A model generated the notes under the pieces. It had not been told where the DNA came from. It did no database searches and worked only from the letters and a program-made list of their open reading frames with translations. From assembly GCA_963924565.1 (NCBI GenBank), contig OZ004609.1:16740001-16804000 (forward strand): a stretch of 64,000 nucleotides of DNA, read 5' to 3'. Source of the stretch: Ascidiella aspersa (lineage: Eukaryota). The position numbers were made by a program, and so were the translations under genes. Shown piece by piece: positions 5,062 through 59,977 of this stretch. Each line of letters starts with the position of its first letter. Within the stretch, counting starts at the first letter, position 1.

Positions 5062-5112
5062 CATTAAAACCCTAAATTTTAGGCACTTCATTAAAACCCT
5101 AAATTTTAGGCA
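5062..5112. repeat. Tandem duplication, 27-bp period (CATTAAAACCCTAAATTTTAGGCA x2)
   Basis: Exact 24-nt repeat starting at 5062 and 5089. Each copy contains the CCTAAA-T-TTTAGG palindrome. Confidence 0.85.
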
Positions 5113-11197: not shown

Positions 11198-14100
11198 ATG
11201 GACGCCCGACTAGTGGCTGCTCGGCTCCCGGGACTTGCAATGTACGGATCCCCGTACGCCTCGCCGTCCTTTCCGGGCTATCTTCCGTACGGACCAGCCG
11301 CCGCTGCTGTTGCTGCTGCCGTCGACCATTCCGCATTGTACCCGCATATGGTAGGATTTCTACAAATTGTGTTACATATTTGTCAGATTTTTCATACATT
11401 TGCGGTTTGTAAGTCAACTTTTGACTTGTCAAAATGTTTGTCGAATCAAAATGGCGAATATCATCTAACTCGATAAGCGATGTTCGTCACTATTTGTTTT
11501 GAACTTGTGACCAACCGATACTATTGTTACTGTTGGTTAATCAGTCAACATATTTGATTTGTACTAGTAATTCTCTTAATTTCGCCATTACAGGACAAGT
11601 GTATCTTGTTCTACTAATTAGCAATGTTTTTGTTGCCGCCAGTCTGATCCCATGCTGGTCTTTGATCAATCTACAAGACATAAAATGTAATTTCGACGTG
11701 AATTCAAATTACTTTTTAAACTTTTCTGAATTTTTTGTAAGCTTTTTTAAATTCAGTCTTATTACTTACAGAACCCCGGTGAGAATTCGGAAGCTTGGCG
11801 GGCCGGACTTACCCAAGCTGCCGCGGCCGCCTACTATGACCCAGCGGTAGCAGCCCATTATGGATACGGGTATGCGAGAAATGTTTTTTGTACTAAACGT
11901 ACTTGACTTTTTATTAAGGTTAATATGATTTATTCCATTTTTGAGAAATCTGTTATATCCACATATAATAATATTTATTGGAGTTTTATTAAGCTTATTT
12001 TATATATATTAGATACGGTCCAATGGGTCTTACCGACGGAGCAAGGAGAAAGAATGCAACCCGAGAAACTACCTCAACTCTGAAGGCTTGGTTAAATGAA
12101 CACAGAAAAAATCCCTATCCAACCAAAGGCGAAAAGATTATGCTTGCCATTATCACCAAAATGACGCTTACTCAGGTTTTTACTCATTTTTCAATATTAG
12201 CGTGAATAGACAATAAAACATATCAACTAATGTCGTTTTAATTATGTAAACGATATTATCAGTTGTTTGCATTGATGTTAAGATTAATGGCCAAAATATA
12301 TTAATGCTATAATAATATTAAGCACAAATTGTTGTTAAACACAAGGAATGTTTTTTCATTTAATCTCGAACTACGCTCCAATGATCATTATCCTTATAAA
12401 CTAATATTTTGCTCAAAATATCTTCTAACGAATATTTAAAATAAATAACACTTATCATTTATTTCAAAAGGTATCGACCTGGTTTGCCAACGCCCGCCGT
12501 CGCCTGAAAAAGGAAAACAAGATGACGTGGTCGCCGCGCAACCGTTGCGGTGAAGATGACGATGAAGATGACCTCGACGATGGTAACCACAGCAATGCTA
12601 ATAATATCAGCCGATCCTCATCACCTCTGCTTGGTACTGATGGAGAGCAACCTCAGCCCCAACCTGGTATCCTCACGATTGGTGAAGCCGAAAGAAGAAA
12701 AGCAGCCAACGTACCAACTAGCGGCCACAGCAGTGGAGGCGAGAGCTTGTCCGATGAGGGTACCGTTTTTTCTGATCAGCGATTGAATTCGATACGGCCT
12801 CAAAGTAGCAAACGAGCGGAAGATACAAATGTCGACAGCAGTGAATTCCGAAGTGATTTTTCCAAAGAAAATGAAACTTCAAACTCGGGTAAGTTGGGTT
12901 CGCATTCAAAATGGCGCGCGATATGAATCGTGCAAACGTATCCAGTAAAAATATGACTACTGCTGTAAAATATGTTTATTAACTACTAATTGTTATCAAT
13001 ATTTTCCTACTAACATTTTCTTTATTATTAAAGTAGTTACTGGGGCATGAAATAACATATCTGTGAATAAATTGACAGTCTGTCATTAGGTAGCACTTAA
13101 ACCCTTTGCTGATGACAGTATGCGAACCAACAGCCCTAGCATTGCTAATTAGTTATAGTTGTGTAATAGTTCTCTGACCAGGATGTGAACTCTCGAACCT
13201 CGGGCATTGGGGTCGCGATTCGGTCAGATACCAAAAGTGTGAACAAACGATCACAGTCAGCTTACAAACGTATGGGGCCTATCTAGAAGTCATGATAACT
13301 ACAACAGACCTCTAATTGGTTTCCAAAATACCTTTCAGCAGCAGTTCAGCCTGACACGACCGACCTTTGCTTGAACTTGGACGCGCTCTTCCTACACTCC
13401 TAATATGTCTCGACGTTACATTTAAGCTTTGAACGAACAGTTGTTAAACGGGCTACAATTCATGCAACTACAAGACTTTGTTTAGTGCATAAATTGTAAT
13501 CGACTCCTACGCGCGTGGGCGATTGATGTTAATTTTAAAGTCTTGAGGAATGCATAATGTATTTTTAGTGAATTAGCCTTTTTTGCTACAGGTTTTTCCC
13601 GTCCTTCAAGCAACGATGGGACACGACTTCCGCAATTACCTTCACATTTCACTCGCCACGCTATACATCCTTACGCCAGTCAGCGCAGCTCCCCATCCGT
13701 CCTTCCAACCAATATCGCCCCAACAGTTGGAAACTCCAGTGGTCCGCGAGCCGGCGTTCCGTGCCATCTCCCCCCTTCCCAAGGACCTCACCGCATGTTT
13801 CATCCTGGGCAGGGTCTTCCTGGACAGTTCAACCCAGCTGCTGCGGCGTCACTGTTGGCTGCATCCAGAGGCCACAGTTTACCGCCGCACGTAATAATGG
13901 CTCTCAACGAGCAAGCCCAGATGCACCAACAATACCAACAAGCGCTGCAGAACCTCCCCCTCCATTCCATGATGGCTGCTCAGCAGTTAGATGGACAGAA
14001 TTCGTCCGGAAATGAGAGCCCTACCTCGAACGCTTCCCACAGTATTTCCAAATCACCTACTACGCCGTCAACGGCAGCTTCAAACGTCCCAACACCTTCT

Positions 14101-14956
14101 CCTAGCAAGCCGAAAATCTGGTCGCTGGCTGACGTGGCGACTAGTAATACTCCTTCCAAAGCGCACAGGGACACACAGAATTCACCATCCTCGCAATCTA
14201 CGAGTCTGCATTCACCGGATCTACCAGCGGGCGACGCGCGTACAATGCACAACTGGATGGACAGCGTGTTGCATCAGAGACTTTCCGGAATACAAGCAGG
14301 CAAGAACCCCTCCGCATTGCCAAACGCGATGCAAATGACGCCACAACAACTTCAACAGTTTGCTGCCAGCCTGGGTTCTTCTTCCCAGCACCCAGCCAAT
14401 GTATTTCATCCTCAATTTATGAATGGAAGCGTTCGCACAGGCCAAAACTCAATTCCAGGCCTGGTCGATCTGAAGGTGGTTCATGAACAGGCCAGCGCCC
14501 AACTGAGAGAAATTAACCGCGCTCAACTCAACAAAAGGAATCTAGAGCAAAGAGGTTAATATTTTATCCGCATTTTCTTTGTTAGCTTAAACATTGTATA
14601 GAATAACTTTGGTTGTGTTTTTTGATTGAATTTATAACATTCGTAAATTTCAACAAAATTTATATTTGTAGATCAAAGTGACGATGCTGAATCGATACAT
14701 TCAATCGAAAGTCGCGACAATTCCGAAAGTGAAAAAGCCCATCATCACAGGTAAATTTTTATATATTCCTTTGTCACAGGCCTTTGAATTTCTTAAAATG
14801 AAACTGTTTTTTAACTTTTTAATAATTATTTTTTATTATCTATTTAATATCAGTGTTCTTTTTCATTGAAATTATTTTATGCTTACTATATAAATCCTAT
14901 TATTTAATATTTGATTTGTTGTTTACAGAATAAACGCTTCTATCATTTTGCAATGA
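11198..14956 (+). CDS. Irx: Iroquois-class TALE homeobox transcription factor (Irx-1 of the pair), about 633 aa
   Basis: Exons are 11198-11350, 11772-11869, 12013-12175, 12471-12888, 13592-14554, 14672-14750 and 14929-14956. All are GT-AG and phase-compatible, totalling 1902 nt. The homeodomain is [44 protein letters not shown]|[20 protein letters not shown] (PYP loop, WFANA). It is followed by an acidic tract [10 protein letters not shown] and the IRO box [12 protein letters not shown]. The last two small exons are less certain; unspliced read-through stops at 14559. Confidence 0.95.
12041..12530 (+). other. Irx-1 homeobox, split by a phase-0 intron (12176-12470) between ...TQ and VSTWF
   Basis: Translation of the two exon halves gives a canonical Irx homeodomain. 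Confidence 0.95.
14107..14142 (+). other. IRO box of Irx-1 ([12 protein letters not shown])
   Basis: Matches the [10 protein letters not shown] Iroquois signature. Confidence 0.92.
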
Positions 14957-17900
14957 TCCTGACAGACTGGTGCGATCCACCAAGCAATATACACAGGCCG
15001 CATTCTTTGAGCGACACTTCGAGAAGGGTTTATGTTGTTCGAAAGAAGGAATAGAATGGACCCATTGGCAACTGTTTATAGCGCTATTACAGTGCCACCG
15101 CAAATGGTACGCAGTGGAGGCGTAAAGTGGCGTTGCTGCGCAGACGTCGTTTTTGTTTGCCGCTTGCTTTTGTCCCGCCACTCCTGGCATTAAAAAGCAA
15201 AAACGTCAGGCGAAATCGAGTTGTTGCTGGACGGAAACCAGGCATCAACACAGGTTTACAAGGAATTACGAGCTACTTCACATGTAACACTCGCTGCTCG
15301 GGCACGATAATAAACCCGCCGTCGACGGCTTTTATGGCACTCAGCCACGGATGAAATTAGCTCACAAACCGCTGCGAAACGACAAAACAGCTCTTTTGAA
15401 CTAGACGAAAATGAACAACCCACTCGTTAAAAAGTGTACCTTCTATAGTACCGATACATTATGTGACATTAAAGATGACAGTCTGATTGCCTAATCCTGC
15501 ACCACTTATTGCTTTGCTGTGAGTTGACGCTGACTTTGTTTGCGTTTTCCGTCGAAATAGATCAGCGTGTTTTTTTCTCAACTATTATCGCCAAGTATTA
15601 TCGTGATATGTATCCGCCCGTTCTTGAATGTTATATTTTGTCAAAGTTCACGTTATTTCTGTTGTTTTACGCACAGCAAAACACAATAAAACTAAACCAA
15701 AAAATGTTTGCTTTTCCTGTTTAATCTCAACAGGTTACCGTTTGAAAACCAGTACGAAGCATTATGATAAACGCAGGTTATGTACAGTTGTACACCCAAC
15801 CTAAACAATTATAACAAATAAATCAACAGGTTTATATCGGTCTAATAAATTTGTTACCCGTAGATGTCTGATAAAGTTTCGGGGTTATTTTATTATTTTG
15901 ACTAGCCGGCGAACAAAGGAATGTTAGCAGTTCCTGTAAAGTGATTTCCACTGTTGGTATATCTTGTAATCGTTAACAGTATGGTAAACGATTGGCATCC
16001 GCCCACCAGGGTTAGCACAATCGACATCAGTTGCGTGATGAAACGATGGGATTTCAAGTAAAATAGGTTAACCCTATTGTTAAACAAAACAGTCCAGCTT
16101 GACGCTTTTAAGATTTAATTGATATTTGGGACAAACCTGGTATCTTACTAAATGCAACACACCAATTCACGAATGAAAAAAAAACATAGAATAAATGTAT
16201 CGTGGGTAAAATTCTGTTGATGGATGATTTCTTCATGTTCGCCCGCCATTTTGGATTATACTTTCGTCTTTCCAGCCAGTGAGTTGTGTCAATCGTGACA
16301 AGGCTGCGTGAGCGAAACCATTAGTTGTACTTTCTCCACGTGTCTGCTGCAAAAATAATTGACAATCGGTTTCATCCCAAAGCCCTTGCTCCTAATCAAT
16401 AATATCAATTTCCATAAACTAGTTTACTATCTGATTGTCATTGATTTAGGTGAGCCATAGGGCCATGAGCGTATTGACGGCACAGGCGAAGCGACGACGA
16501 CGTCCCACCGACACCCATGCGATCGTGTCGATCAATTCTCGCCCCTGCGCCCGCTACGCGGCCTGCACTTAAACTGCTGTTTAATATCCTAAAGTGGGAA
16601 ATTTTAACGGCGATTTTTCTATTAATTATGCATAGTCGCTATCGTCTCTGCCGTGGATGATGGCTGGGTGGTGCGAGACGCTTGCTGGTGTCGGGGGATT
16701 TGTTAACTCGAGCGAAGGCGGCGGACCTCTGAAGTCGGGAGGCGCCTTACAAACCTGCCGACCGTTTGTCATAGAATTTAACGGGATTAAGAGTTCATAA
16801 ATATTTTTAAAGAAAAAATATTTATTAAGGGGCCGTGAAAATCAATTTAACCGAAACCTCGGTTTGTTACAAATTATTAACAAATTACCCAATGATCTGG
16901 GTGATTATAGTATTTTCGACAAGAGATATACAACGTATGTAGTAAGTTTGTTTGATTTAAAGCAGACACCGGCGGTACACAATATTCATGTTTTTAACGT
17001 TCCAAATAAAATACCAGGCACCTTTTAAGATATAGTTAAATGAGTGTTAGTTACATACGCCTGCCCTTTCTCTTTTTTTCCGCGTTCTCTCTCCCTTCGC
17101 TTTAACTCGCCCCGCTATATATTATTCTCTTTGCTCTCTTCTCCATTGGCTTTACCCAGGGAATGTTAATGACGGTTCGTGCGATACGAATATTGAATTA
17201 CTCCAAATACTCGTCTCGAACGACATTATACGCATCTCCTCGGAGCCCAATCGTTCCTTACACAACAACTTTCAATGGGCGGCAAATACGCATTACCGGA
17301 TAGGGTGATGATTTTCGGATTTTGGTCAAAGCCCAGGACGAAATAAAATCATACTGTTAAGGAAGCGCGAAAGCCGTGATTTCAATTCTATCGGGGACGA
17401 ATTAAATTAGCCCCGGGCACCTGCAAATCTCCCTTTGACGGAGATTTTGTCGCAGGTTGTTATTGTAGCAGAAATTGCTGTTCATTTGTTCCGCTACACC
17501 ACCGCGCCGTGTAGTTTACAAGGAAAAAACGTCTCCCATTAGAACAATAAGGAAAAATAAAATTTCTCTTCTTAAAGAGGCCACAAGCTATAAAATGAAT
17601 TTTGGATATCTTTAAGGTCAAAAATTTATAGGGTTGACGCAAGGTATATACAATTATACATGTTATGACAACTATTTTTTTTTACTTTTCGTAGAGAATT
17701 ATGAAAAAAATGTGTCATGTTGCGCCACTTATGTCAACTCCAATTTGCGAGCGTACCAATTTGAAGTTAAAAAACAGTTTGCGGGGATCGCAAGCGATTA
17801 TCGTTCCTTGTTTTTAATTGATGCGCCAATTGGTGACTGTGCCAAATGTTGTGATGAAAAGAAAGTCGGGTGGATCGGATATAAAGGGCATTATCTGGCC

Positions 17901-18215
17901 CATATATCAGCGCGCGAAATCCGCAACTCAAACAACTTGCATTTACATTTCATTCAGTGGCTGTTCCTAAGCGGATGTTGACCAATCACATATTAGCGCT
18001 TGCGTCTTTAAAATTAATTCACCAATTTAATTACGCCATGCCCAAAGCATTTTAAAGGCATATCACTTCCCTAAACTTAACTTGAGAATAGTCATATTTT
18101 GTAAAACTTTTCGATTTTTATTGCATTGTCGCTTTATGCATAATGGTATTATGCCAATTTCTTGCAATTGGTTTTCTGGCGTAATTTTGTGATATCCTGT
18201 CTCCACCTTTTCTTA

Positions 18216-18312
18216 TATATTTGTAGATCAAAGTGACCATGATTTTGTCCATCGTCACTTCGATCTACAAATAAAAAATTGTCCATCGTCACTTTGATCT
18301 ACAAATATAAAT
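18216..18312. repeat. Three copies (1 forward, 2 inverted and tandem) of the Irx-1 intron/exon junction 14658-14686
   Basis: 18216-18241 is forward (25/26 identical). 18250-18273 is inverted (23/24). 18284-18312 is inverted (29/29). Confidence 0.92.
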
Positions 18313-21300
18313 ACAATTTACCCCACTAAGAACACTTTTTTTCAAATGGTTGTTTAAAAATGGACAATTTATCCGTTTTAAAAGGCAGATTTACATGATG
18401 CAAAGATATTATTCATGGCTGTGTTATTTATAGATAAGTAAAAATCTATTCTAATATAATGTTTTTCAGGAAAGATGCGGACCACTTAATAAACCAGAAT
18501 GCAGTTATTTAGCACAGTCTACACATCCGTCACTATAAGTTTACCACCCTAAGTAATTCAACTTGAAATGTTACAACATTGACTAAATATTAGGCCATTA
18601 AGGATAAAAAAAAATATTTTTTACTTACTATTTGGAAAGAAACTATAATATTGCAGTTTAAATCAGACACTGGTAGTGTTCTTATACATGGTACTATTAC
18701 AGCAAACTAAAACATAACGCAGATTTTTTAATACAGAATATTGAAATAATATTGCTCTGAAAAAAATTGTTCTTATTCTTTAAACTGGACGTCAAATTGT
18801 TTCAAAAAGAACTATTATATTAGTTCGTTACTATTCTTATAACTCGAGACACCGCACATATCTTTAAAGTTAAAGTTTCCTTTTTAATACCCTATCCATT
18901 GAAACAAAGCGGCAGCTTACAATTTAGATGGTGAAATATTTCCATCACAGTGTTTGAGTCTTAGCAACCCGTAAAACAGCGCATGTTCAGAAGTTTTGTA
19001 ATTTTGTCCAAAGCACTTGACACCTTGTCTGACACTTGTTTGTTTGTGTCTTGCGTGTCACTTGCGGGAAATTGATGGCGGTCTCCATTACAAGGCAACA
19101 CCTGTTTACCAGCGTCATTAACGCCGTGTTTATATACAAGGCAATATCGCAATAAGTGCCAGCTAATCGCTTGCCATATCTTCTCCGCACTATTTTTGTT
19201 AGAACCTGCGTGTTGCAATTTGATTAGGTGATGAGTTAATCTTAGTTTTGCTGTATAACACAACATAAAGCAACCAAAAGGATATTTCATGTCTAACTTT
19301 TACAGAAAATATAATAACAAAGTATAAACTCTTTTTTATAATGTTTAAATTGTGATAATAAAACTTGATTTTGCAACGTTATAAAAAATTCACTTCAAGT
19401 CAGCCAAAACTGAGGCTATTGACGTGATACGAAGAAGTTTAAATATGTTATATAAATATACTACTAACCATTAAATAAGTGTGGTCCAACATAACGTTTA
19501 ATTTTATTATATTGTAATGCTATAAATTTATGTTCATTTATAGTTAGACGTTTACTAAAAAGCAGCCCTACCTTTAAGACATTACTATAAAACAAATATA
19601 TCAAAGAGATCAATGGTTAGAAGTTTTTACCAACTAGTTTAACAATTTCGAGAATTTTGTACCTGTACAATTTCACAAACCCAATTTTACGATAGCCTCA
19701 CACCTAAGCAAGGTCATAATCATAAGTGTAGGCAAGTTCGAGCTACGACAGAAGCAGCAGGGAATGTGTATTGTGCGGTCGGGAGAGCATCCGCGTTGTA
19801 ATCGTGACGCATATGGGGGCATCGTTTCGTTTCCATTTCGCATGTACTGCATGATACACTGTCTGGTGAGGCGCGACCCGCGTTTATTGGAGGCGTGAAA
19901 TTGCGTTATAAACCCGCTCGAATCGCGTAAACAAGCAAAGGAAAAGGCGCAGATTAAAGAAGATTAACCCCGATAGGTGCTTCTCGGAGGTAACCTCGGG
20001 TGACGGTCGCAATATGTCGATTGGCCTCGTCCTGACCTCGCTGCTGTCGAAACTCTATTTTACCCGTGGATACACGATCCTAAACTAATTTTAGATCCCA
20101 AGACATTAGATGGTTAGGGTGCGAAGCAAGCTAACGAACCAGCTAACTTTATTTTAGTTGGCCAAGTTGCTTTGTATGAATTCAAGTAGATTCTTTAGGA
20201 GTTTTTGTAACAACTTTTAGACATTAACAACTTAAAAACAAGTTTCGTCCATTATGGTTGCATGTATTCAACAATTGCTAACAGTGTCTCGAGACATTCA
20301 TTTGTTTGGATCAGTGGATTAGCGTAATCCTTTGAACACAAACACTTCGTGTAAGACCTTTACATGAAATTTAACGATTGTCGCATTCGTTTTCAAAGAT
20401 TTGACACGATTTTTAAACTTTTGTTTTTATCGAAACACGGCTTTCTTGATAAGAAGGTCGAAAGCTCTATAAATCACGATTTGAGCAGTATCGACGAAAC
20501 GTAGTTCGGATGTTCTGAAAAGTTTACTATGGAGTCAAAAATCGTTAAAAAGACAAATAAATTGTCAATGTTGAAGTTAGATAGCACTGGTCCTCGGCTT
20601 ATTCTTGATTTGCTTTGGGATGTTGTTGACATGCTTCGCTTTTCTGACAGTCGTTGCATCCAAGTGCATGTTGTTAACTTCATTTTGTGGAATGGCTTTT
20701 AGTTTACGACGCTGCTGTCCGATATGAAGTTTGTTATTAGCGGATGTTCAGGTGTTGCGGTGCAGAGACTTAAAACCAAACCATGTCGAATATTGCTCTA
20801 CAGGTTGGAAATGCAAGATCTTGTCTTGATAGCGATTAGCATCAAGATTACCAATTTTCAAGTAATCTTGAAGAAAAATTTCACAATGCACGTTAACAAC
20901 AAATTCATCGATGGATAAACCTTCCCATTAAGAGTAAATAATGTTTTTGGTTTTTAAAAGATAAATATCTTAACACAGAATATTAACATTTATTTATTAC
21001 TTAAAAAACTATTTTATACAATAAATGAACACTAAAATGATACATTGTGCAGCTCTATTTCAGTTAATTTAATTGGACGCTCTCTTTAGCGACACAAAAC
21101 GTACTGGAGAAAATAAACGAATGAGCAATAGAAAAGCCTCTCAGTGCAGAGAAGATTAAGCTGTTTTGGAAAGAGCGCGAGTCATTTTGGCTTTCGGTGG
21201 ATTTAATGTAAATATTTAGGTGTAGGAGATCGGACGACAGGTGCTGGCCCAAGTAGTCACATGGTTTGTCGTCAGCCTAATTTGTTCCACTGACACAAGA

Positions 21301-48763: not shown

Positions 48764-51700
48764 ATGTCTTTTCTACCGCATCCGCCTGCTTTATCAGCAC
48801 CTCCGACTGTTGGGGGGCATCGGCATCAGGTGAGAAAGCAGTCTGTCAAGTTATTAAATTAACAAATGTTAAAAACCGACTTTATCTTTATCATGTTTTG
48901 TTAACAAAACAACAAAACAATATCTACACAGTGTACACACAATTCAGCAAACCAAATTTTGTCAATCAGGTCGCAGCATCGGGATCCGAGAATAGCGCAC
49001 GACCGAGCGTGTCAATGGCACCCGGGCCGGCATCTGTATTTCCATTCCCCGCAGACGCGCGTGCGTTTTCGGCACGCATTCCTGACCTTGCTTCGGCGCT
49101 TTACGGCCTACCGTACACCAACCCTCAATCCGTATACCCGGGTTTTGCAAGCATCGACCCAGCCATATTTCAATCCAACCTGGTAAGTTATGCAACAGTT
49201 TTCTTTGAGAATTCGTTTTTCTTTCGCCAGTGCTAATTGTTCTGCGCTGCCGTGATCAAATTAATATGGCGATAGCTCAGACCTGGGTTGACCATAAGTT
49301 TTGTATTTTATATTTCTAATAAAGTGATATGATGTGTGTTTACAATTAGGAAAATCCTAGAAAATTAAACAAAACCTATTACTTCAAAATTGGGTTGCGA
49401 AAGTTTTCGGGTAAAACTGGCTTATTTCGTTCGATTTTTTACGTAATGTCTGTACCAGAAAATAGGAGCAATCAAGTTTGACACTTGAAACTCCAAAAAA
49501 TCGGTTCAAACGTGTTTTCGTCGAAGGGCCAACTAAGTGCTAAGCGCTGCGCCCTTTTGTTTTCGACACGCACCGCTCGTGACCTTTGCTTCAACCATGT
49601 TATAAATGGTAAGAGGATGTGGCCTTGTTATCGTTATTGCTTTGCGACAACTGTTCGCTAACTTGCAGAGGCGTGTAGAAGAATACTTATAACAACCACT
49701 TAGTAACAAGCCTTCCTTGCCATGTATTTAGCCGTACACATAGAATGTGAACTAATAAAGCCCCTTTTTCACGGAGTTCTCAAATCACAAACCTATTTTT
49801 TTTTATGCGTCAACTCACGTAAGAGTCCAATAAAAACTGTGGGCAAACATATATAATAAAATGATGTTAAAAAGTCATGTTTATAGTTATTGAAACATTT
49901 ACAAGTATCTGTACCTGTGTAAAAAATGATGGATTTTAATCAAATGTTTCTTACTTTTTACGAAACACATTTGCGACCTGTTTTTAAAATAAACTTATTT
50001 CGCGTTGCTCACGTCATTCCTTGTGCAATAAATACCCTATTTAAAAAAACTTGTGACACTCAGTTGAACACCCGCACGTAAGCAATTTCTTCTAATTAAG
50101 GCGACTTACGGAATAAGGTGATTAAGAACTTTGGACGTTGATGCATGTCAGCATTGTCGGGACTAATCTAAGAGCGATGTTTTTCTTCTCGTGGAAAACA
50201 CGGTGCCGTGATGTGATCATGCTATTAACAATACGCGACTCACAGTGCGTAACAGGTTTTCCCGTTATCTATCACTGCCAACATAGGTTACAGACTGTGT
50301 GCGCTCACTAGATGCAAGATACTCTTTTGGTTTCGTATGTGACAACGACCAGGGGTCACTCGGTGTCAAAATAGTTCGAAATCACAAAACGTGACTTGGA
50401 TGGTGGCTAATAAAAACGCAAGCGCCGCACTTTAGTCGACTTGCGATAATGTTTACAACAAGGGAAGGTGTGCATACCGATACGTCATAGATATAGGACA
50501 TGTCGTTTATATTCAGCTCGAAAACAACCACCACTGGGAAAGGGTAAATTAGGTTGCTGGTCTGTTTTCAATATAAATATGGGTGATAATTTTTTTGTTT
50601 TAGTTTTTTTGAAAATTGTTTATAAAAACGTTTAAGACAGCAGATGAGTTTAAATAAGTTATACTTGTGTCGCAGAACCGAATCAATCACAAAGAGATCC
50701 CAAGCCACTGGCGACCGCAAGTACCACAGAGTCCGCTCCTGCAGCATTGTGATCCCAACCTCGCAAGTCTGATGTACCAGGGAGGGTGAGTAAAGCAACA
50801 CTTAGAGCTTTTTTGTAAATTTTTTTCACGCTTTTTCTAATCGTTTTGTTTGTGATAGGAGCTTACATTGTCCGTATTGTAAATGAAAGTGCTTTCCAGC
50901 TATATTATGGATTACCCATCATTAAGACGTTTCACTATTATTCTTGTTTTTAAATAACACAAGTCATTCCTTAAATTTTATTAGTTTGATGTTGAAAATG
51001 AATAAAGAGTTATTCGAAACGTCCAAAATGATACCTACTTCTGTATGGGCTTTGATATTCTTATTACGTCTTATTAGTTTCAATAGTAAAGAAATAAAAT
51101 AATACCCTTCCACATGCTTTTTTATTGGCCGAATTTCGTACAAAATTAACTAAAATTTGACATGAAATACAAACTTAAAAAATAAAAAATAAACCTGTTT
51201 CTGTCAAGATAATTATAATAAGTACCGGTAGAAATTTGTAAGGTACGAAAATTGTCCTACAATTGTAGAAATAGCGCATCGTTCTGAACATTACGTTTCA
51301 ATGCGTAATAAATACGCGAAACAGGCCAGAATTAACAAAAACAGCGGTAAACAATTTTCTCCAGCCCATTTTCTTTATTTTGAAGACACGTTAGTATAGC
51401 GAAAAAACTCCAAAAGGCGAATGACTTCGCCTTAATTTTACCACGTCAGTTGCTGCATAGTGAGCCCACTGTTTGCGTTCTATCGCCTGTCCCTCCTAAT
51501 TGCGACGCCTCTCCTCGAACATTACAGCCAAATTATCCTTAACTTCCAGCGAGAAAAGGGGTATAAGAAAGGGTGGCAAGCTTATAAATACACAAAACAT
51601 TGCCACCGAAGTTAACAACCTATGTTCAGTGAAACATAAAATGCGTGAAAGAATCATTTTCAACAATTTAAAAACGTTAAAGTAAGGTTGTTGTGTTTTT

Positions 51701-54700
51701 AATTCAAGATATAACCCACATCGATAAGTCAACATTTTCAGTGTCCCCTTGTTCGCAATAAAGCTAAAGTCAAAATACTACACAAGAATGGCGACATGTT
51801 GCACATTGCAACAGAAAAATGGACTCAGTTCGGTGTAAAACGACTGACAGGAAACGCCGTTACACTGTTTCGCTGCTCACAATATTAATTGGTTTGGGTC
51901 GCAATGTGTGGAGACGCAGCCCTACAAGGGAATTTGTCTTTATTATAGTTTTCGGCTGACGATTTTCCAATAAGTTGTCCAAACGTATATAATGGAAACG
52001 GCTTGTCGCAGTAGCGCGGAAGTAATTAACACAGCCTGTCGTTGTTTTTGGCGCTAAACATGCTCGTATTTCCCTTGCGCGTCTCTTCTGTGTAAGTTCT
52101 TGTTTGGGGGGCTATGGTATAACGAGCATACGGTATTGCGCCGGCTGCTATTCTTACAAGAATAAATCATGATTCCTTGGTTTGGCTTCTTCTCTGTCGT
52201 ATTGTACTATGTGACACATACTGCAGTCATAAAGAGGTGAAAGGATAACAGAAATACCTCCCAGGTAAAATTAGTGTCGCCTGAACATCTGCCCTACTAT
52301 TATTTAAGCACACTAAGATAGTTTAAAAATATTTAGCATAAAATAAGTTTGATAGTGCTGCAACAACTTCTTTTTTGCAGGTTACATGGGTCCGTTTAGC
52401 TTGATGATAAAAACACGCAATTAACGCTTTGTTGCTTATCGACCCACTAATGCGCAGGCAGAAGTAAAAATGGTTTCCATTTTTCCAACCCACTAGCAGT
52501 GGCCCACCTTTCCACTTTAAACACGATTTTAAGTGTCGGAAAATTTGTTGTCACTTCTCTTAGTAATTTCCATACAGCAGACAAGCTCTGCACCGTTTTG
52601 ATTTCCCCAGCTACAGCTAAACTAATTTGTAGTAGTCAGCACATGCACAACATGAATTAAACAACAAAACGGCAGCTAATGTAATGTCAGTGCAACCATT
52701 TCGCCGTAACCAACCGGCTTGCATTGTGTAAGTCGCTGTATACGACGGGAGAAGCCCGACGGCGACCGGGGTGCATTAAATGTTGAAAACATAAATTTGA
52801 GCCAATTTACCTCACATTGGATGCAAAAGTATGTATTTTACCCACTTCTTGAATTGTCTTAGTTGTTTGGCAAAGTTAATATACCAGTCCATTTCATTGG
52901 GTGTATATTTACTGTTTTAGGTACGGGTCTTTGGCGCTAAACGACGGAGGCCGGCGCAAAAATGCCACCAGAGAAACAACAGCTACCCTTAAAGCTTGGC
53001 TTAATGAGCACAGGAAAAACCCATACCCTACCAAGGGGGAGAAGATCATGTTGGCCATTGTTTCCAAGATGACACTGACTCAGGTGGTGTACCTACTTCC
53101 TTGATTGATCTTAGTTGAACAACCAGGCAGCCCTAACGCGCTATTAATATAGCATTGTTCTTCGTATACGCATCAGTCATTGCCTTACTTGCATCGCTGA
53201 CGCCTGGCAAATTTAACCCGTAACAACAAAGTGCCATTGGCCATAAATCACCTGCTAACAGGAAGCTAGTTGTATCATTCACAACCAAGAAACCATAATA
53301 TTACGAAGTTATGTTGTCCATCAATACCAATATTCAAGTGCATCATGTTTTAGTTATGTATTTACGGAGCACTAACGCCCGACATTCTGCTCGCAATTTC
53401 CATCTAAATGTCGCATACAATCAAAACTAAGCAACATAAATGTGAAAACGGCGTTTTTTCTGTTACACCAATATGCTGTGGAAAAACACCTGTAACCAAT
53501 TTATGGGCATCAACTACAGGGAATCGGTTTATAAGGCTTTTTTTAAATACCGCAGGTGTCGACCTGGTTTGCCAATGCACGACGTCGCTTGAAGAAGGAA
53601 AATCGCATGACGTGGTCGCCTCGCAACAGATGCGGGGACGAGAGAATGAGCGACGAAGAAGACTTTGAGGCCGACGGACCCGGCAAAAACATAAGCGCTG
53701 GTAAGTGGTGTGCTTTTTGTTAGTCCTTGTAAATAGTTTTGCCAACATTTTATTATATAATATATTAAAATCAGTTGTGTAGTGTACATAATGTATATTA
53801 TACTACATCCTGAAATATCGTTCAATTTTTACGTTCCTTTAAAAAAATATGACTATACTATAAAAAATCATAAGGTGAAGCATGTAAATTAAATGTACTC
53901 AGACCATAATAGTTACGCCGCCCGCCAAAGCCGCAACATTATTTATAAATTTTAAATTTTTTTCAAGCATCTTTTCGTGAGTAAACCGTTTCTGTAGTAT
54001 GTGCCGAAACTGGCGCTTTTTTATGTGGCAATAAAATTTACGCGAAAAACAATTTATGTTTGCGGTGAATTGTTATTACAGGAAATAAATTGCAAAAAAA
54101 AACAGTTTTGTTGACAATAGGTTTGTTGGTTTTAGTTATGTGGACAAGCGATTTGCTAGTTAAAGACAAAAATAATAAAATGAATTTAAAGCGAGTAACT
54201 TTTGTTTTAAAATTAAGCAAGTGTTATTCTTTATGCTAGCATACTTTTCCCGTTTTTTTATTATTTTAGTATAGTTACAACAAAATATACCAAAAAATAT
54301 CTAAAAAATTTTCCGGATGCGTTTATTGTCAAAGGCCATCGATATAATGGACAGCAATCAAGTATTCAAGATTCATTTAAATAAAAAAAAGCTTATCGGC
54401 GTCGTTTGTCAAAATTTCCATTGATGTCCGCGATTATAAAAATCGTTTGTGGTAAACATGCAGATTTCCTCACATAAATGGTTCAAAATGTTGGATTGCA
54501 TTTATCGCCAACGAGTGTTTTTGTAAGCGACCCAAACAAATATAGTTTCATCGATAACACGTGTAAATTTTAACATGGAAAGTATGTTAAACTTTACTCC
54601 GATTGAATTACACACAACACACACTAAAATTCTCACTATCTAAAATATGAAAATCCATCGCCACAAATTTTTTATTATTTTAAAATTCTCACACTCACGT

Positions 54701-57700
54701 ACGAGCACAATCATACTTAATAAACCGTCGTACTGGCCATTGGACACAATCGAGCGATTAGTGACAAGTAATGCCGCCTGGCAAGCAGCGCACATCAGAG
54801 TCGGAAGGAGTTACAACCAATCGCGTATAGCTGCCATTGCGTGACAGAGGAGCCGCCAAACGCCCAGTCCGGGCAACAGGCCAGTGGCCTTTCGTGTCAA
54901 GGACTTGTAAATGCGTCTGCGAACGCGATGTTATAACAATATCCACGGGAAGGCATTGGAAAGCCGAATGCGTCACGGGTGTTGCAAGTCCGATTATATC
55001 GCATTGATTCGCTGTGAACAAGCTCGTTGTGGTGGCAAATATGGGCAGGGGATGCGAATGTGCCGCACAGCTGTCTGCCCAGCAACTAAGGGCAACGCCG
55101 CCCCAATACATGACGACTCGATGCAACTTGGACCGGTTGAATAGGCACTTGTTTAAATAGGTTATGACGAAAAAAACATTCCAGTGTGGGTAAACTATGT
55201 TACTAATTTGGATAAATTATAAATGCAAGAAACTATTGCGTAGGTTGTGGAACATTTTCAAACCATTTTACGGCAGTTGTAATGTTTTTTTGCCGGTCCG
55301 CAATAAGTTATACTGGTTCACCAAAAGTTTTCTTTATTTGTGCAATTAGAAAGTATTTTTTTTTCCAACGTTAACTGCGTATATATGTATAACATTTCAG
55401 CGCTTAGCGCCAATTTTACCTTCAACTTTTGTATGTTAAGCCCCTTTTGGGAGTCTGTATATTAGTTGTCTCAGTAAATATCGTGCCATCGAAATTCTGG
55501 TACCGGTCCGTGAACGAACTTTTTGTATTTTTACCGGTTCGCAAGTGTCAAAAGGTTAAAAATGATTGAATTCGATTATATAAGCTTTGACTTTTGAGTG
55601 TCACCACCAATTTTAAATAAGAACAAATCGGCGATAAGTACATTTATGTTTTTTTACCAAATACTAAGTACCAAATTACACATCGCTAATTGTTCATTGA
55701 AGTTTGTCAGACGCATAGTCTGGATGGGCGCTAAATTTGGCAAATAAACATTTGCGCAGCTAATTATTATCGCAGGCCGCTGAAAACCAATCAGGGTTCC
55801 CACGTTCGTCAGAGCGCTTGTCCACTTATTGGCGGGCAATCGGAGTGCTGCATCCTCTTGGAAACAAACCGCGGTTACGCGACACCCCAGAACCAGGATC
55901 GCTCAACTCAACCTTACTAACCTAAACGGCAGTGGGGGCTTGTACGCTAAAATATATATTTCTCTTTCACTCGCTTTGTCTGCTTCCAGCATGGTTAAAA
56001 TGGAGGAATGTGACTTGACTCGAAGCCGTATTAGTTCTCCACATCACCGATAAATTCTCTTTTTCTCTAAATTTCGTCAGTTGGGTTGCCGTTGTGTTTG
56101 AACTACGAGGCTAATTTACAAAAGTAATAGTCTTAGCCCTAAATTCTATTGAAGCAATGAAAAATATATTTCACGTGTCAGTGCGATAGAAACGTTACAT
56201 GTGTACGCTAGAGAAGGATATACCAAACAACACACAGTTAATGTAAGCAGCTGCTTTGTCAGTCAGTCGTTCAATAAACACATCAATTGAATCTTCCAAG
56301 CTACAAAGTATTCAGCATACGCTCCTAAATAGGAAATCATTTGCTTATCACGCTTGTTTTAAGGCCTCTATTCAGTTCCAGGGTCAGACAATTGAAGAAA
56401 CGTATAGCAAATACTTGCCCCGACTTTGCATACATGAATCAATATAGCGCGATCTATTTCCTTCCATTAAATAAGCCATTATATTGTGCAAAATGAAAGA
56501 GTCTCCAATTTACTTTGATTAATCAAGAAGCTCACAGAGCTATAGTTCAAAATGCCCTGTTTTGACTAGTAAAATTGAGGCTTTGTTTGGATTTTGGATA
56601 TTGATAGACTTTAGCGTTGTTTTTGTATGGATGTTTATTGACATAATCAATAATTCAAAAAATTTTACAGCTTACAAAATTCACATAGTTTTTTTTAAGT
56701 CACAAAAATGTTTCCATGAAAATTTTCCATTACTTTTAAATTAAAATAATGTTATAATTTGAATTACCAAATTTAATAAAAGCTAATCGGTGATATTTAA
56801 TTATATTCGGTGGTATTTAATTATATAAGTGATATTTAATTATATTCTCTACAGCTTTTTAAGTCGTTGGTAAAATTATCAGAGCCACCTGTATTTAAAT
56901 AATACAAAAGGTAAGTTGATTGATCGACGTATTTGGTGTGGTGATGGTATTTGGCAAAGTGGAGCAATACGTGATTTTCAGTCCAAAAGAGGCGAGGGTT
57001 GTCACAGTGTGTGGGATGTGAAGGGATGCCATCTAAGAATGCAGATTGGTGCTACTGCCTTCTTGGCATCCAATTACTCTTTTACGCCTACTTCCTATTA
57101 TCGCACAACCGAAGTAAAAAACTAACCTTACTTGGAAAACTGAACTATGTTTATCAGGAGTTCGCTATATTGTCCCAGGGATGACATCGGGGTTTGATAA
57201 TCTGCCCTATTCAATGAAGTATCGTATTGACCGGACTCGGCTATAGTCGCGCGAGGTTATTTTCGGTGCACTGCGAACGGGTCTATTTTTGTCTAGATTA
57301 TAACAATCGTCGAATCAACCAAAAACACCAGCATGCTAAAGATTAACATCGCGTGTCAATTGCATGCAAATTTTCCTGTTGCAAATCATTGTTGCAGAAA
57401 CTCTTGGATAATCAATTTATCCATTGTTTCACTGTATGTTGAATGCGATATTTATGAAATTCTTTCTTTTCATGAGCACTTTTAAAATTTGTTTTTAATC
57501 TATATTTTGTTTACAGGAAAACCAAATATAGGCTGCCACTCGGAGATGGACAGCCACATGGACGAAGTGAATAGAGATATCCCAGGTCACTCGCATAAAC
57601 TGAAGAGCGAAGAGGGGGAGTTGGAGGAGGAAGCGGATTCTGTTACGAACGACAAACTTCCCAGTAATTTGTCCTATACCAACATTCACACTCAGCTCTT

Positions 57701-59977
57701 TCTCCGCCACTTAGCCTCTTTGCCTCCACATCTTCGCCCAAGCGATCCAATTAAGTACTTCCAGCAACAGATCCAGCAGCACGCGGCTACAAATCGCAGA
57801 GCAGTTAGTGTTCCTGACATGCCTGCGACCACTGTCGGGCGTGCCGGGGCGGAGCAATACAGGGAGAAGGTGCGACAGTTTTCGATGGACGCTCATGACA
57901 ACTACAAAGTTTTTCGCAAGACTGTCGCGCGTTGCAGTAGCGAGAGCTCGCCGAACTCTTCCCTGAACAGATCTCCATCACCTCAGGCGAACCGTTTCTT
58001 TAATCGTGATCCACCAGCCTTGGAACGAGGATCGTCGTATCGTATGCACAGCAATCATGAATTCTCCATGCACCCGGTACGAAATAACCCTGGTAGAACA
58101 CCATCTTACGAAAAACACGCAATGCCATCCATCATAAACGAATCTGACGATCAAGCAGTGCAAGAAAAAAAGAAATATAAAATATGGTCTCCCGTCAACA
58201 TATCAGAATTGCAATCCAAAAGTCCTATCCTTTCGAACAATTCGGATTCCGAGATAAATCAACGCCAAGTTATTAATTCCGCAAGACGCAATTCGGTGTT
58301 TACGTACGACGAATCGTTCATGAACGACAGCCGCTTCTCGCCAGAGACCCACAAGCAGGGAATCTCTGCCTCTCCGGCAGCCAGCTCGTCGTCGGAAAAA
58401 ACAACCTCTGGTTCACCTGATAATGTCGGTAAAAACATCATCGAAGAATATCAAAGGCAGCTGGCGTATCGCAACCTCACCGCGAAGACGCAACACGCTC
58501 TTGCCGCTACCTTGGCAGGATTGGCAGAAAACAGGCGGAACGGATTTCAAAGAAACGCTTTTCCTAACCCGGACGCTCTAGCATTGTTGCAACAACAGCA
58601 GCGCGCTCACCACAACTTCGTGCTCTCCGACATTTTCCATTCTAACGCTTACAAACTCTCAAAAGAAGATCGAAACCCGAGCGCCAACGAAGAAGATGAA
58701 GAAGCCGTGTTTTCCGATGTTGAAAGCAATGCCCGTAAGTAGAATGTTACTTCTTTTTATTAAAATGTGATAAAAAATTAGTTGATTATTATTGGAGTTT
58801 AAAAATGTCACACAAACTTCAATATATTCCCCTTATTTTGCAAAATTGGAACAAAACAAATTAAACCCGGTGCATTTTGTCCATCCCACGCATTGACGGG
58901 CATAAAAAGGTCGCAAACACTTATCTGCGACATCAGCACCATATTGTTATTGGCAACGGGCGTCTAAAAATGTGTGGCGTCCACCGCGCTGCATGGCGTC
59001 GCGCGTCGCCACGTCTTCGCTGGCTCGATTTCTTGCCAGCAGCGAGAAGACAATCGGCGGGAAGTGCGCGGGATTTCCCTCCGCACTTTCGAAGCGAGCG
59101 CGGCGCCGCTATTATCTCTGTGACGCGACGAGCGACAATGGCAGGATAAACGTTGCACACAACGGGAAACGGGCCTGTCGCGCAACCACAAGAAATTGCA
59201 AGAGCGGGAAAAGCGCTCGAATAGGAGTCTGGGATCCTCCTGACGATTCCCGACAAAACTCCGCAGTCGGGAATTTAAATGAGCGTAGGCAACGAGAAAC
59301 AATTTCAAAATATATACAGCCGCATTCCTAACGCGGTTGTTGTTCGACCAGCGCCTTTGCTGTTCTGTAACATTTCGCATGGAATTATAATTGCACCCAA
59401 TCAAGGAAGGAAAGGTTTCATATGAGCAGCTGGTTGTTTTGCAACATCGCATAAAAACTAAGCTAAGTCGAGACATTTGCATAGGAAGCGCCATGTAGCG
59501 AGGATCGCAATAATATTGACTCGGCTGGTATAAATTAATGAATATATTATAAACACACAACACGTTTCGGCGTTTCGCGCAGATACAAATCCAATGCGCA
59601 AATGCATTTCATACGTTTTTTTGTCAGGAATCGAAATTATCATCAGACAAAACGCTGCTTGGTGGTCAAGCTACCTAAATTAATATTTAGGACTATCAAA
59701 CCGAATGATTCTTTTTTTTAAATTATGTAATTTAAGCCCGAATTATTATTTACTACCCCAATTTGAAAGTTGTTAATCCGTATACCAAACTGAAACCTGA
59801 AAAATATGTTATTTTTGTTTATTGCTTGATACGTCTTTAAACAGACCCTTGTTGTCTTACGCAGCGATAAATCTGACAAAGAGCAAGAGTCCGACTCCGC
59901 GCAGGGAAGAGCGACCTACCTTTAAACTTGATGAAGAGGATCAAAAGCGGATAATACCTTCGATTGTCGCCAATTAA
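48764..59977 (+). CDS. Irx: Iroquois-class TALE homeobox transcription factor (Irx-2 of the pair, more divergent), about 675 aa
   Basis: Exons are 48764-48829 (MSFLPHPP...), 48970-49182, 50676-50785, 52921-53083, 53556-53700, 57517-58734 and 59865-59977. All are GT-AG and phase-compatible, totalling 2028 nt. The homeodomain is [44 protein letters not shown]|[20 protein letters not shown]. The IRO box is degenerate ([11 protein letters not shown]). There is exon-by-exon similarity to Irx-1. Unspliced read-through of exon 6 stops at 58742. Confidence 0.92.
52949..53615 (+). other. Irx-2 homeobox, split by a phase-0 intron (53084-53555) at the same position as in Irx-1
   Basis: Translation of the two exon halves. 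The first homeobox exon is 163 nt in both genes. Confidence 0.95.
56787..56846. repeat. ~20-bp tandem repeat x3 (CGGTGATATTTAATTATATT) in an Irx-2 intron
   Basis: Three near-identical units, each containing TAATTA. Confidence 0.85.
58173..58205 (+). other. Degenerate IRO box of Irx-2 ([11 protein letters not shown])
   Basis: The K.KIWS core is retained; LA..AT is replaced. Confidence 0.7.

What the first reader, a model, noticed from the sequence alone, without database searches (positions are those of the whole stretch)
18216..18370. Sense and antisense copies of an Irx-1 splice acceptor captured 3.6 kb downstream
Seen: the junction ATTTATATTTGTAG|ATCAAAGTGACGATG (14658-14686, acceptor of the penultimate coding exon) reappears three times. 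One copy is forward (18216-18241, 1 mismatch) and two are inverted in tandem (18250-18273, 1 mismatch; 18284-18312, perfect 29/29). The linker AAATTGTCCAT (18276-18286) is itself the reverse complement of nearby 18360-18370 and overlaps the copied segment by CAT. Known: such multi-template, microhomology-joined patches are typical of template-switching or polymerase-theta repair scars. Inference: the scar implies physical contact between this site and the Irx-1 3' end. In a read-through transcript the inverted copies could base-pair over the real acceptor, or be sequestered in a local hairpin with the forward copy. That would form a potential RNA switch for the splice that adds the Irx-1 tail.
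Basis: partly seen in the sequence, partly recalled or inferred. Interest (0 to 1): 0.8.

Follow-up and report, generated by a model that had tools for sequence, protein, structure and literature searches.

The report
Templated repair scar copying an Irx junction
A 29-base stretch from the 3' end of a sea-squirt Irx homeobox gene was copied three times into unique DNA 3.6 kb downstream, most likely as a harmless DNA-repair or replication scar, and nothing yet shows that it controls splicing.

Summary
The 29-mer at 14658-14686 recurs at 18213-18312: one forward copy (25/26), one inverted copy at 29/29 and one inverted copy at 28/31. Shuffles expect no such match. These four places are the only ones in the 308.6-Mb genome, and the flanks are single-copy.

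All copies stop at the same source base (14686), and identity falls to chance level beyond the core. The two inverted copies are 34-nt tandem units. Their linker matches an 11-mer 85 nt away.

This anatomy fits one short-patch capture followed by local template switching or duplication. That is the known kind made by Pol-theta end joining or MMBIR/FoSTeS.

The gene is a tunicate Irx (closest: Ciona). The one orthologous locus I could fetch shares flanking conserved non-coding blocks but has no patch and no analogous complementarity.

The RNA-switch idea is thermodynamically possible: a hypothetical 3.9-kb RNA pairs source with R2 and F with R1. No other evidence supports it. No RNA or DNA reads could be obtained. 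Twelve poly(A) hexamers lie between gene and patch. The "acceptor" exon is not confirmed by homology.

Verdict: a real but ordinary scar; function unproven.

The parts
14658..14686 (+). Source segment S: the last 14 nt of the putative 119-nt intron 5 plus the first 15 nt of putative exon 6 of the + strand Irx gene
   Evidence: Sequence read; it is the exact or near-exact template of all three copies.
14672..14750 (+). Putative exon 6 of the Irx gene. Its frame is open in the phase left by the exon-5 donor. It is not confirmed by homology and may be the last coding exon, because reading through its own donor gives an immediate stop
   Evidence: Searches give the frames and splice signals. Searches find no BLASTP alignment to the Ciona Irx proteins.
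18213..18241 (+). F: forward copy of S (core 18216-18241, 25/26, private G>C change at 18238)
18242..18249 (.). 8-nt spacer between F and R1; it forms the loop of the F/R1 hairpin, and its last 5 nt are the linker shared by both tandem units
18250..18280 (-). R1: inverted copy of S (23/24 in the core, 28/31 extended). One private change creates an AATAAA hexamer at 18270
18284..18312 (-). R2: inverted copy of S, 29/29 identical
18245..18312 (+). Two 34-nt tandem units (18245-18278 and 18279-18312), each made of the 5-nt linker plus an inverted S copy; 94% identical to each other
   Evidence: family D1; the linker plus copy start occurs exactly twice.
18360..18370 (+). 11-mer that is the reverse complement of the R1/R2 linker (18276-18286). 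It is a candidate second, local template, joined to the S copy through a 3-nt ATG overlap
   Evidence: only these two occurrences in 64 kb, expected 0.08.

Best explanation
The patch at 18213-18312 is a lineage-specific templated-insertion scar in intergenic DNA downstream of a tunicate Irx gene. A short stretch of about 26-31 nt at 14656-14686 was copied once by a DNA polymerase that switched templates during break repair or stalled replication. This is the kind of event made by Pol-theta end joining, or by MMBIR/FoSTeS-type switching. Further local switches or a 34-nt tandem duplication then multiplied the copy and inverted it, using a second template near 18360-18370. The copies later picked up a few private substitutions, or carry errors from low-fidelity synthesis. 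Shown here: the copying itself, its sharp limits, the shared end point, the chimeric linker, genome-wide uniqueness, and absence from one distant orthologous locus. Inferred: the enzyme or pathway, the order of events, and the absence of function.
For: The copies are real and far beyond chance (local alignment scores 47-58 against a shuffled maximum of 34). Only four places in 308.6 Mb carry the core, all at this locus. The flanks are single-copy, so this is not a transposon or dispersed repeat. Boundaries are sharp: cores are 26-29/29 identical while the 25-nt flanks are 5-8/25, and all three copies end at source base 14686. This argues for one short-patch capture and against a decayed long duplication or three independent captures. 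Both tandem units carry the same non-source linker, and that linker matches an 11-mer 85 nt away in inverted orientation. Per-segment length and a template kilobases away fall within what is reported for POLQ templated insertions: 2-35 bp, with templates adjacent to the break or many kb distant, in nearby, snapback and direct-repeat classes (PMC7454005). The private differences between copies (R1 against R2: 3 over the 34-nt units, 2 over the 33 nt that one search aligned; F: 1 in 26) show an aged sequence rather than an assembly duplicate. In 264 kb of contiguous sequence, the other local repeats of 20 nt or more were tandem arrays, collinear multi-block duplications or short isolated matches (inverted ones 168-478 nt apart looked like transposon ends; most not checked genome-wide). 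No other multi-copy patch copied from a kilobases-distant site was seen. The orthologous locus L027 shares collinear conserved non-coding blocks on both sides of the patch (window 17471-17498 and 19952-20038). It has neither the patch nor any above-chance repeat of its own junction region downstream: best scores 23 and 26, null mean 27, null maximum 34.
Against: No reads were available, so presence in the organism, polymorphism and the empty allele are untested. R2 is still 29/29 identical to S while its tandem partner R1 has changed at three positions. That pattern could hint at constraint, though P is about 0.125 under neutrality. Four copies arranged so that S pairs with R2 and F pairs with R1 in a global fold is a tidy design for a scar. 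The only relative available is very distant (exon DNA 75-80% identical, exon-5 protein about 40-47%), so its lack of the patch says nothing about conservation among congeners. Junction microhomologies cannot be scored properly without the pre-insertion sequence.
Confidence: 0.7

Rival explanations
1. A cis-acting RNA switch. In a read-through pre-mRNA the inverted copies pair with the polypyrimidine tract, the 3' splice site and the first 15 nt of exon 6. This blocks removal of the 119-nt intron, and retention puts a stop codon right after exon 5. The forward copy F competes as a local decoy.
For: Predicted duplex energies are S:R2 -43.1, S:R1 -34.7, F:R2 -34.8 and F:R1 -28.2 kcal/mol. The minimum-energy fold of a hypothetical RNA 14500-18400 pairs S with R2 over all 29 nt and F with R1. 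Intron retention would end the protein at the codon starting on the donor. Long-range pairing that masks splice sites is an established mechanism (PMC2724269, PMC8052449).
Against: The complementarity exists by construction, so the energies are not evidence of function. Twelve AATAAA/ATTAAA hexamers lie on the + strand between the stop region and the patch. The patch sits among short conserved blocks with GATTAA and CACCTG motifs that look like intergenic enhancers, not a UTR. A 119-nt intron is likely to be spliced co-transcriptionally before the polymerase has travelled another 3.6 kb (general knowledge). F is transcribed first and lies 8-42 nt from the inverted copies, so it would capture one of them at once. 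There is no analogous complementarity in the orthologous locus. Use of exon 6 is itself unconfirmed.
Confidence: 0.08
2. A young hairpin small-RNA locus made by inverted duplication of its target. The F/R1 or F/R2 hairpin would be diced into small RNAs antisense to the Irx pre-mRNA. If the protein really ends at the exon-5 stop, they would instead be antisense to a 29-nt site in its 3' UTR.
For: The 126-nt region folds at -37.3 kcal/mol (+ strand, z -9.3) and -40.5 kcal/mol (- strand, z -7.1). The only Rfam matches there are miRNA-precursor models. Template switching is documented as a source of de novo miRNA hairpins (bioRxiv 10.1101/2023.04.19.537475, also PMC10710096).
Against: The Rfam scores are far below threshold: 27 bits against a gathering score of 80, and 26 against 101. 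No family reaches its gathering score anywhere in the window. At 24-29 bp with an 8-nt loop, the stem is shorter than a typical animal pri-miRNA stem (general knowledge). There is no evidence of transcription and no small-RNA data.
Confidence: 0.05
3. F is the acceptor of a duplicated, alternative terminal mini-exon. The copied 3' splice site at 18226/18227 would be followed by a short open frame and by the AATAAA at 18270.
For: F keeps the full acceptor and the first 15 exon bases with one change. A private change in R1 creates an AATAAA hexamer about 45 nt downstream.
Against: Only 11 nt of the polypyrimidine tract were copied, and no branch-point region. The resulting frame resembles nothing known. 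There is no RNA evidence, and L027 has no counterpart.
Confidence: 0.03
4. An assembly artefact: a small false palindrome or duplication introduced during consensus building.
For: No raw reads could be examined.
Against: The copies differ from one another by substitutions. They sit inside unique sequence on a 39-Mb contig. An artefact would not copy a site 3.6 kb away in both orientations.
Confidence: 0.03
5. A miniature inverted-repeat transposon whose terminal repeats happen to match the Irx junction.
For: F and R2 form 26-bp terminal inverted repeats around a 42-bp core. A TA dinucleotide on each side can be read as a target-site duplication.
Against: There are no other copies in 308.6 Mb. 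The TA ends are simply part of the palindrome. S stands alone without a partner arm.
Confidence: 0.01

Closest known systems
[quoted passage not shown]
   Same: Short templated stretches in direct and inverted (snapback) orientation. Several rounds of copying are joined at very short overlaps. Segment length lies within the reported 2-35 bp. Reported templates are either next to the break or many kb away (PMC7454005; PMC7165422).
   Different: Three copies of the same distant template is more elaborate than the usual single insert. Enzyme dependence, the break site and the accompanying deletion cannot be seen without the ancestral allele.
MMBIR / FoSTeS replication template switching
   Same: Microhomology-primed switches between templates kilobases apart in cis give complex patches with inverted and direct segments (PMC8421209).
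   Different: Those events usually accompany larger copy-number changes or rearrangements. Here the only net result is an insert of about 100 bp.
Short template-switch mutations that create hairpins and de novo miRNAs
   Same: A near-perfect inverted repeat (F/R1, 8-nt loop) could arise in one step by copying the opposite strand nearby (10.1101/2023.04.19.537475).
   Different: The arms themselves were imported from 3.6 kb away, and there is no evidence that the hairpin is transcribed or processed.
Conserved long-range RNA structures that modulate splicing (Drosophila intronic boxes, Dscam1 docking and selector sites, human PCCRs)
   Same: Complementary boxes, one of which covers a splice site, with a competing box nearby (PMC2724269, PMC12962786, PMC8052449).
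   Different: The known cases lie inside the pre-mRNA and are recognised by conservation or compensatory change. Here the boxes lie beyond the predicted gene end, are perfect because they are young copies, and are absent from the one relative examined.

Membership tests
Templated-insertion repair scar (TMEJ / MMBIR class) | The inserted sequence is identical or nearly identical to a template elsewhere on the same molecule, in direct or inverted orientation | tested here: met
   29/29, 25/26 and 28/31 identity to 14656-14686.
Templated-insertion repair scar (TMEJ / MMBIR class) | Short templated segments with sharp ends (reported 2-35 bp for POLQ) | tested here: met
   Cores are 26-31 nt; flanks are 5-8/25 identical. 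The size range comes from PMC7454005.
Templated-insertion repair scar (TMEJ / MMBIR class) | Microhomology at the switch points | tested here: inconclusive
   There is a 3-nt ATG overlap between the S copy and the 18360-18370 template. The outer junctions cannot be scored without the pre-insertion allele.
Templated-insertion repair scar (TMEJ / MMBIR class) | A derived state: an ancestral or alternative allele lacks the insert | tested here: inconclusive
   The patch is absent from orthologous locus L027 between shared conserved blocks. That species is too distant to align the site base by base.
Templated-insertion repair scar (TMEJ / MMBIR class) | Dependence on Pol theta or on break-induced replication | not testable with these tools
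   This needs genetics.
Long-range RNA structure regulating splicing | Both complementary boxes lie in one primary transcript | not testable with these tools
Indirectly, 12 poly(A) hexamers lie between the boxes.
Long-range RNA structure regulating splicing | Conservation or compensatory change of the pairing in relatives | tested here: not met
   L027 has no above-chance complementarity to its own junction region: score 26 against a null mean of 27, and the repeat finder found none. Only one distant relative was available.
Long-range RNA structure regulating splicing | A stable duplex covering a splice signal | tested here: met
   S:R2 is -43.1 kcal/mol and is present in the global fold. This holds by construction.
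miRNA / hairpin-RNA precursor | A hairpin markedly more stable than shuffled sequence | tested here: met
   z = -9.3 and -7.1.
miRNA / hairpin-RNA precursor | Membership of a described family | tested here: not met
   The best Rfam score is 27.3 bits against a gathering score of 80. Nothing in the window reaches a gathering score.
miRNA / hairpin-RNA precursor | Small RNAs mapped to the arms | not testable with these tools
   No read data.
MITE / foldback transposon | Multiple dispersed copies in the genome | tested here: not met
   Only this locus carries the sequence.
Iroquois (Irx) homeobox gene (identity of the source gene) | A TALE homeodomain with the [13 protein letters not shown] motif, plus the IRO-box region, collinear with known Irx proteins | tested here: met
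   tblastn of Ciona H2Y2Q4 and H2YT01 maps five collinear exons at 11198-14403, with 93% identity in the first homeobox exon.

The most novel reading that the evidence does not exclude
The patch is a recently born regulatory RNA element created in one burst of template switching. It would work in one of two ways: as a cis long-range clamp in which R2 or R1 masks the 3' splice site of the last Irx intron while F acts as a decoy, or as a hairpin giving small RNAs perfectly antisense to a 29-nt site in the Irx pre-mRNA or 3' UTR. Either would be an animal example of a regulator born by inverted duplication of its own target.
Probability: 0.1. Interest if true: 0.7.

Novelty: new member of a known kind. 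Interest (0 to 1): 0.27.

Why it matters
As a scar, it is a clean natural example of multi-round template switching. It uses one template 3.6 kb away and one about 85 nt away, and it shows how a single repair event can create a ready-made hairpin together with complementarity to a gene's splice junction. Such events are a plausible raw material for new RNA structures and small-RNA genes. If RNA data showed that this one is used, it would catch that process at an early stage, next to a key developmental gene. On present evidence it is a curiosity with no demonstrated effect on Irx.

Tried and rejected
Assembly support, polymorphism and expression therefore remain untested.

Closer relatives: the word search on exon 5 and the full HMMER search found nothing closer than a JGI metagenome contig at about 40-47% protein identity. 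The Ciona protein is not on record in the contig index.

Spliced model: I searched exon by exon, by reference.

Rejected readings:
- Dispersed repeat or MITE.
- Decayed long duplication: sharp boundaries and no gapped extension.
- Hidden gene between 15 and 20 kb: Pfam hits on six ORFs are all sub-threshold.
- One of this genome's hammerhead elements with inverted arms: no hammerhead or core motif near the patch.

Arguments dropped:
- An apparent by-eye similarity of exon 6 to the Ciona C-terminus is not supported by BLASTP.
- I first thought that T at donor position +3 argued against intron 5. The homology-confirmed homeobox intron of the same gene also has a GTT donor, so I dropped this.

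Other: earlier-findings look-ups near the locus returned nothing.

Full report
**Observation.**
- The source S is 14658-14686: 14 intron bases ending in TAG, followed by the first 15 bases of an open frame.
- F is 18216-18241, forward, 25/26.
- R1 is 18250-18273, inverted, 23/24 (28/31 if extended to 18280).
- R2 is 18284-18312, inverted, 29/29.

With up to three mismatches the 29-mer hits exactly these four places, where shuffles gave a mean of 0.00. Local alignment scores are 47-58 against a maximum of 34 for shuffled targets. R1 and R2 are two units of a 34-nt tandem repeat (18245-18278 and 18279-18312, 94% identical). Each unit begins with the same 5-nt linker that is not in S. The 11-mer spanning the R1/R2 joint is the reverse complement of 18360-18370. 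These are its only two occurrences in the window (expected 0.08). Allowing for the choice of 11-mer, this is modestly significant.

**It is not a repeat family.** The window lies at G000:C3:16740001-16804000 of a 308.6-Mb, 75-contig assembly. A 24-nt core with up to two mismatches occurs only at these four places in the whole genome. The 1.2 kb around the patch matches only itself. In 264 kb of contiguous sequence (200 kb upstream plus the window), the other local repeats of 20 nt or more were tandem arrays, collinear multi-block duplications, or short isolated matches. The inverted ones 168-478 nt apart looked like transposon ends, and most were not checked genome-wide. None is a multi-copy patch copied from a site kilobases away.

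**Gene context.** Exon-by-exon searches by reference show that the gene is an Iroquois-class homeobox gene. Its nearest named relatives are the Ciona intestinalis and C. savignyi Irx proteins, so the genome is a tunicate's. Five collinear exons map at 11198-11350, 11775-11873, 12014-12175, 12468 onward and 13594-14552. A second Irx paralogue lies at about 49-58 kb.

Its peptide has no detectable match in the Ciona proteins. The exon-5 frame stops on the codon that begins at the donor, both here and in the orthologue (GGT TAA here, GGT TAG there). Exon 6 read through its own donor also stops at once. So S may be a used acceptor of the last or the penultimate exon, or simply sequence about 100 nt beyond the stop. 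Only RNA can tell.

**Anatomy of the copying.** Identity is 26-29/29 inside the cores and 5-8/25 in the 25 nt on either side. Gapped alignment does not extend the match. All three copies end at the same source base, 14686. The simplest history is one short-patch capture of S followed by local multiplication and inversion. The multiplication could be a 34-nt tandem duplication plus a snapback copy. It could also be repeated switching between S and the local 18360-18370 template through the ATG overlap; this second version explains the 11-mer better. The copies carry private changes: one in F, and three in R1 over the 29-nt core. That argues for a real, somewhat aged sequence, or for low-fidelity synthesis, and against an assembly duplicate.

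Segment length, both orientations and a template kilobases away in cis all fall within what is described for POLQ templated insertions. Those are 2-35 bp, with templates adjacent to the break or many kb distant, in nearby, snapback and direct-repeat classes (PMC7454005). The same features fit MMBIR-type switching (PMC8421209).

**Comparison with a relative.** The full HMMER search found nothing closer than P0001. Its 67-kb JGI metagenome contig (L027) carries the orthologous Irx locus, with exons 75-80% identical in DNA. Downstream, three short collinear conserved blocks are shared:
- window 17182-17201 with L027 15447-15466
- window 17471-17498 with L027 15667-15694
- window 19952-20038 with L027 17790-17875

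These blocks contain GATTAA and CACCTG motifs and look like enhancer pieces. The patch lies between the second and third block and has no counterpart. L027 has no repeat of its own junction region in the 9.6 kb downstream (best scores 23 and 26; null mean 27, null maximum 34). The species are far apart, so this shows that the patch is not ancient. It says nothing about congeners.

**The RNA-switch idea.** Predicted duplexes are strong: S:R2 -43.1, S:R1 -34.7, F:R2 -34.8 and F:R1 -28.2 kcal/mol. The local 126-nt region folds at -37.3 kcal/mol (z -9.3). The minimum-energy fold of a hypothetical RNA 14500-18400 pairs S with R2 and F with R1. All of this follows from the copying and is not independent evidence.

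Several things count against the idea:
- Twelve AATAAA/ATTAAA hexamers lie on the + strand between 14929 and 17556.
- The setting looks intergenic and enhancer-like.
- F is transcribed just before the inverted copies and would capture one of them.
- A 119-nt intron should usually be removed before the polymerase has gone another 3.6 kb (general knowledge).
- There is no analogous pairing in L027.

A hairpin small-RNA reading is also possible. Its only support is sub-threshold Rfam miRNA hits (27 bits against 80), and no family passes its threshold anywhere in the window.

**Verdict.** The splicing-switch part is an untested possibility (about 0.1 together with the small-RNA variant). This is a new example of a known kind of mutation, with modest interest unless RNA or population data show use or constraint.

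Noticed in passing
window 49054-58205 (+): A second Irx paralogue lies in the same orientation about 38 kb downstream. Its homeobox exons are at 52904-53086 and 53553-53690 (80% and 72% identical to Ciona Irx), so the window holds a tandem Irx cluster.
   Followed up: partly
window 17182-17201, 17471-17498, 19952-20038; L027 15447-15466, 15667-15694, 17790-17875: Collinear conserved non-coding blocks lie downstream of Irx and are shared with a distant tunicate contig. They contain GATTAA and CACCTG motifs and are likely enhancer fragments of the Irx landscape.
   Followed up: partly
window 14551-14559; L027 10843-10848: In both species the exon-5 reading frame ends in Gly plus a stop codon exactly on the putative donor (GGT TAA here, GGT TAG there). 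Retention of the next intron would therefore give a defined shorter C-terminus. This is either a conserved stop or a conserved GTTA donor.
   Followed up: partly
window 12170-12180: The homology-confirmed homeobox intron (between TLTQ and VSTWF) uses a GTTTTT donor, with T at +3, so non-consensus GTT donors are in use in this genome.
   Followed up: no
L027 (JGI metagenome 3300001913, contig of 67375 bases): A metagenome contig carries a complete tunicate Irx locus, so it is host DNA in a metagenome sample. It was the only usable relative for this genome in the collections.
   Followed up: partly
window 5062-5112: A 24-nt segment is repeated at 27-nt spacing; apart from the finding and a 19-nt pair at 56790/56829, it is the only exact local repeat of 18 nt or more in the window.
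   Followed up: no
G000:C3:16723975-16724335 (about 16 kb upstream of the window): Two adjoining 9-nt microsatellite arrays (units ACTTACGAT and CGATACTCG), about 360 nt in all.
   Followed up: no
window 18270-18275: A private T>A change in R1 turns the copied tract into a canonical AATAAA hexamer about 45 nt downstream of the copied acceptor in F.
   Followed up: no
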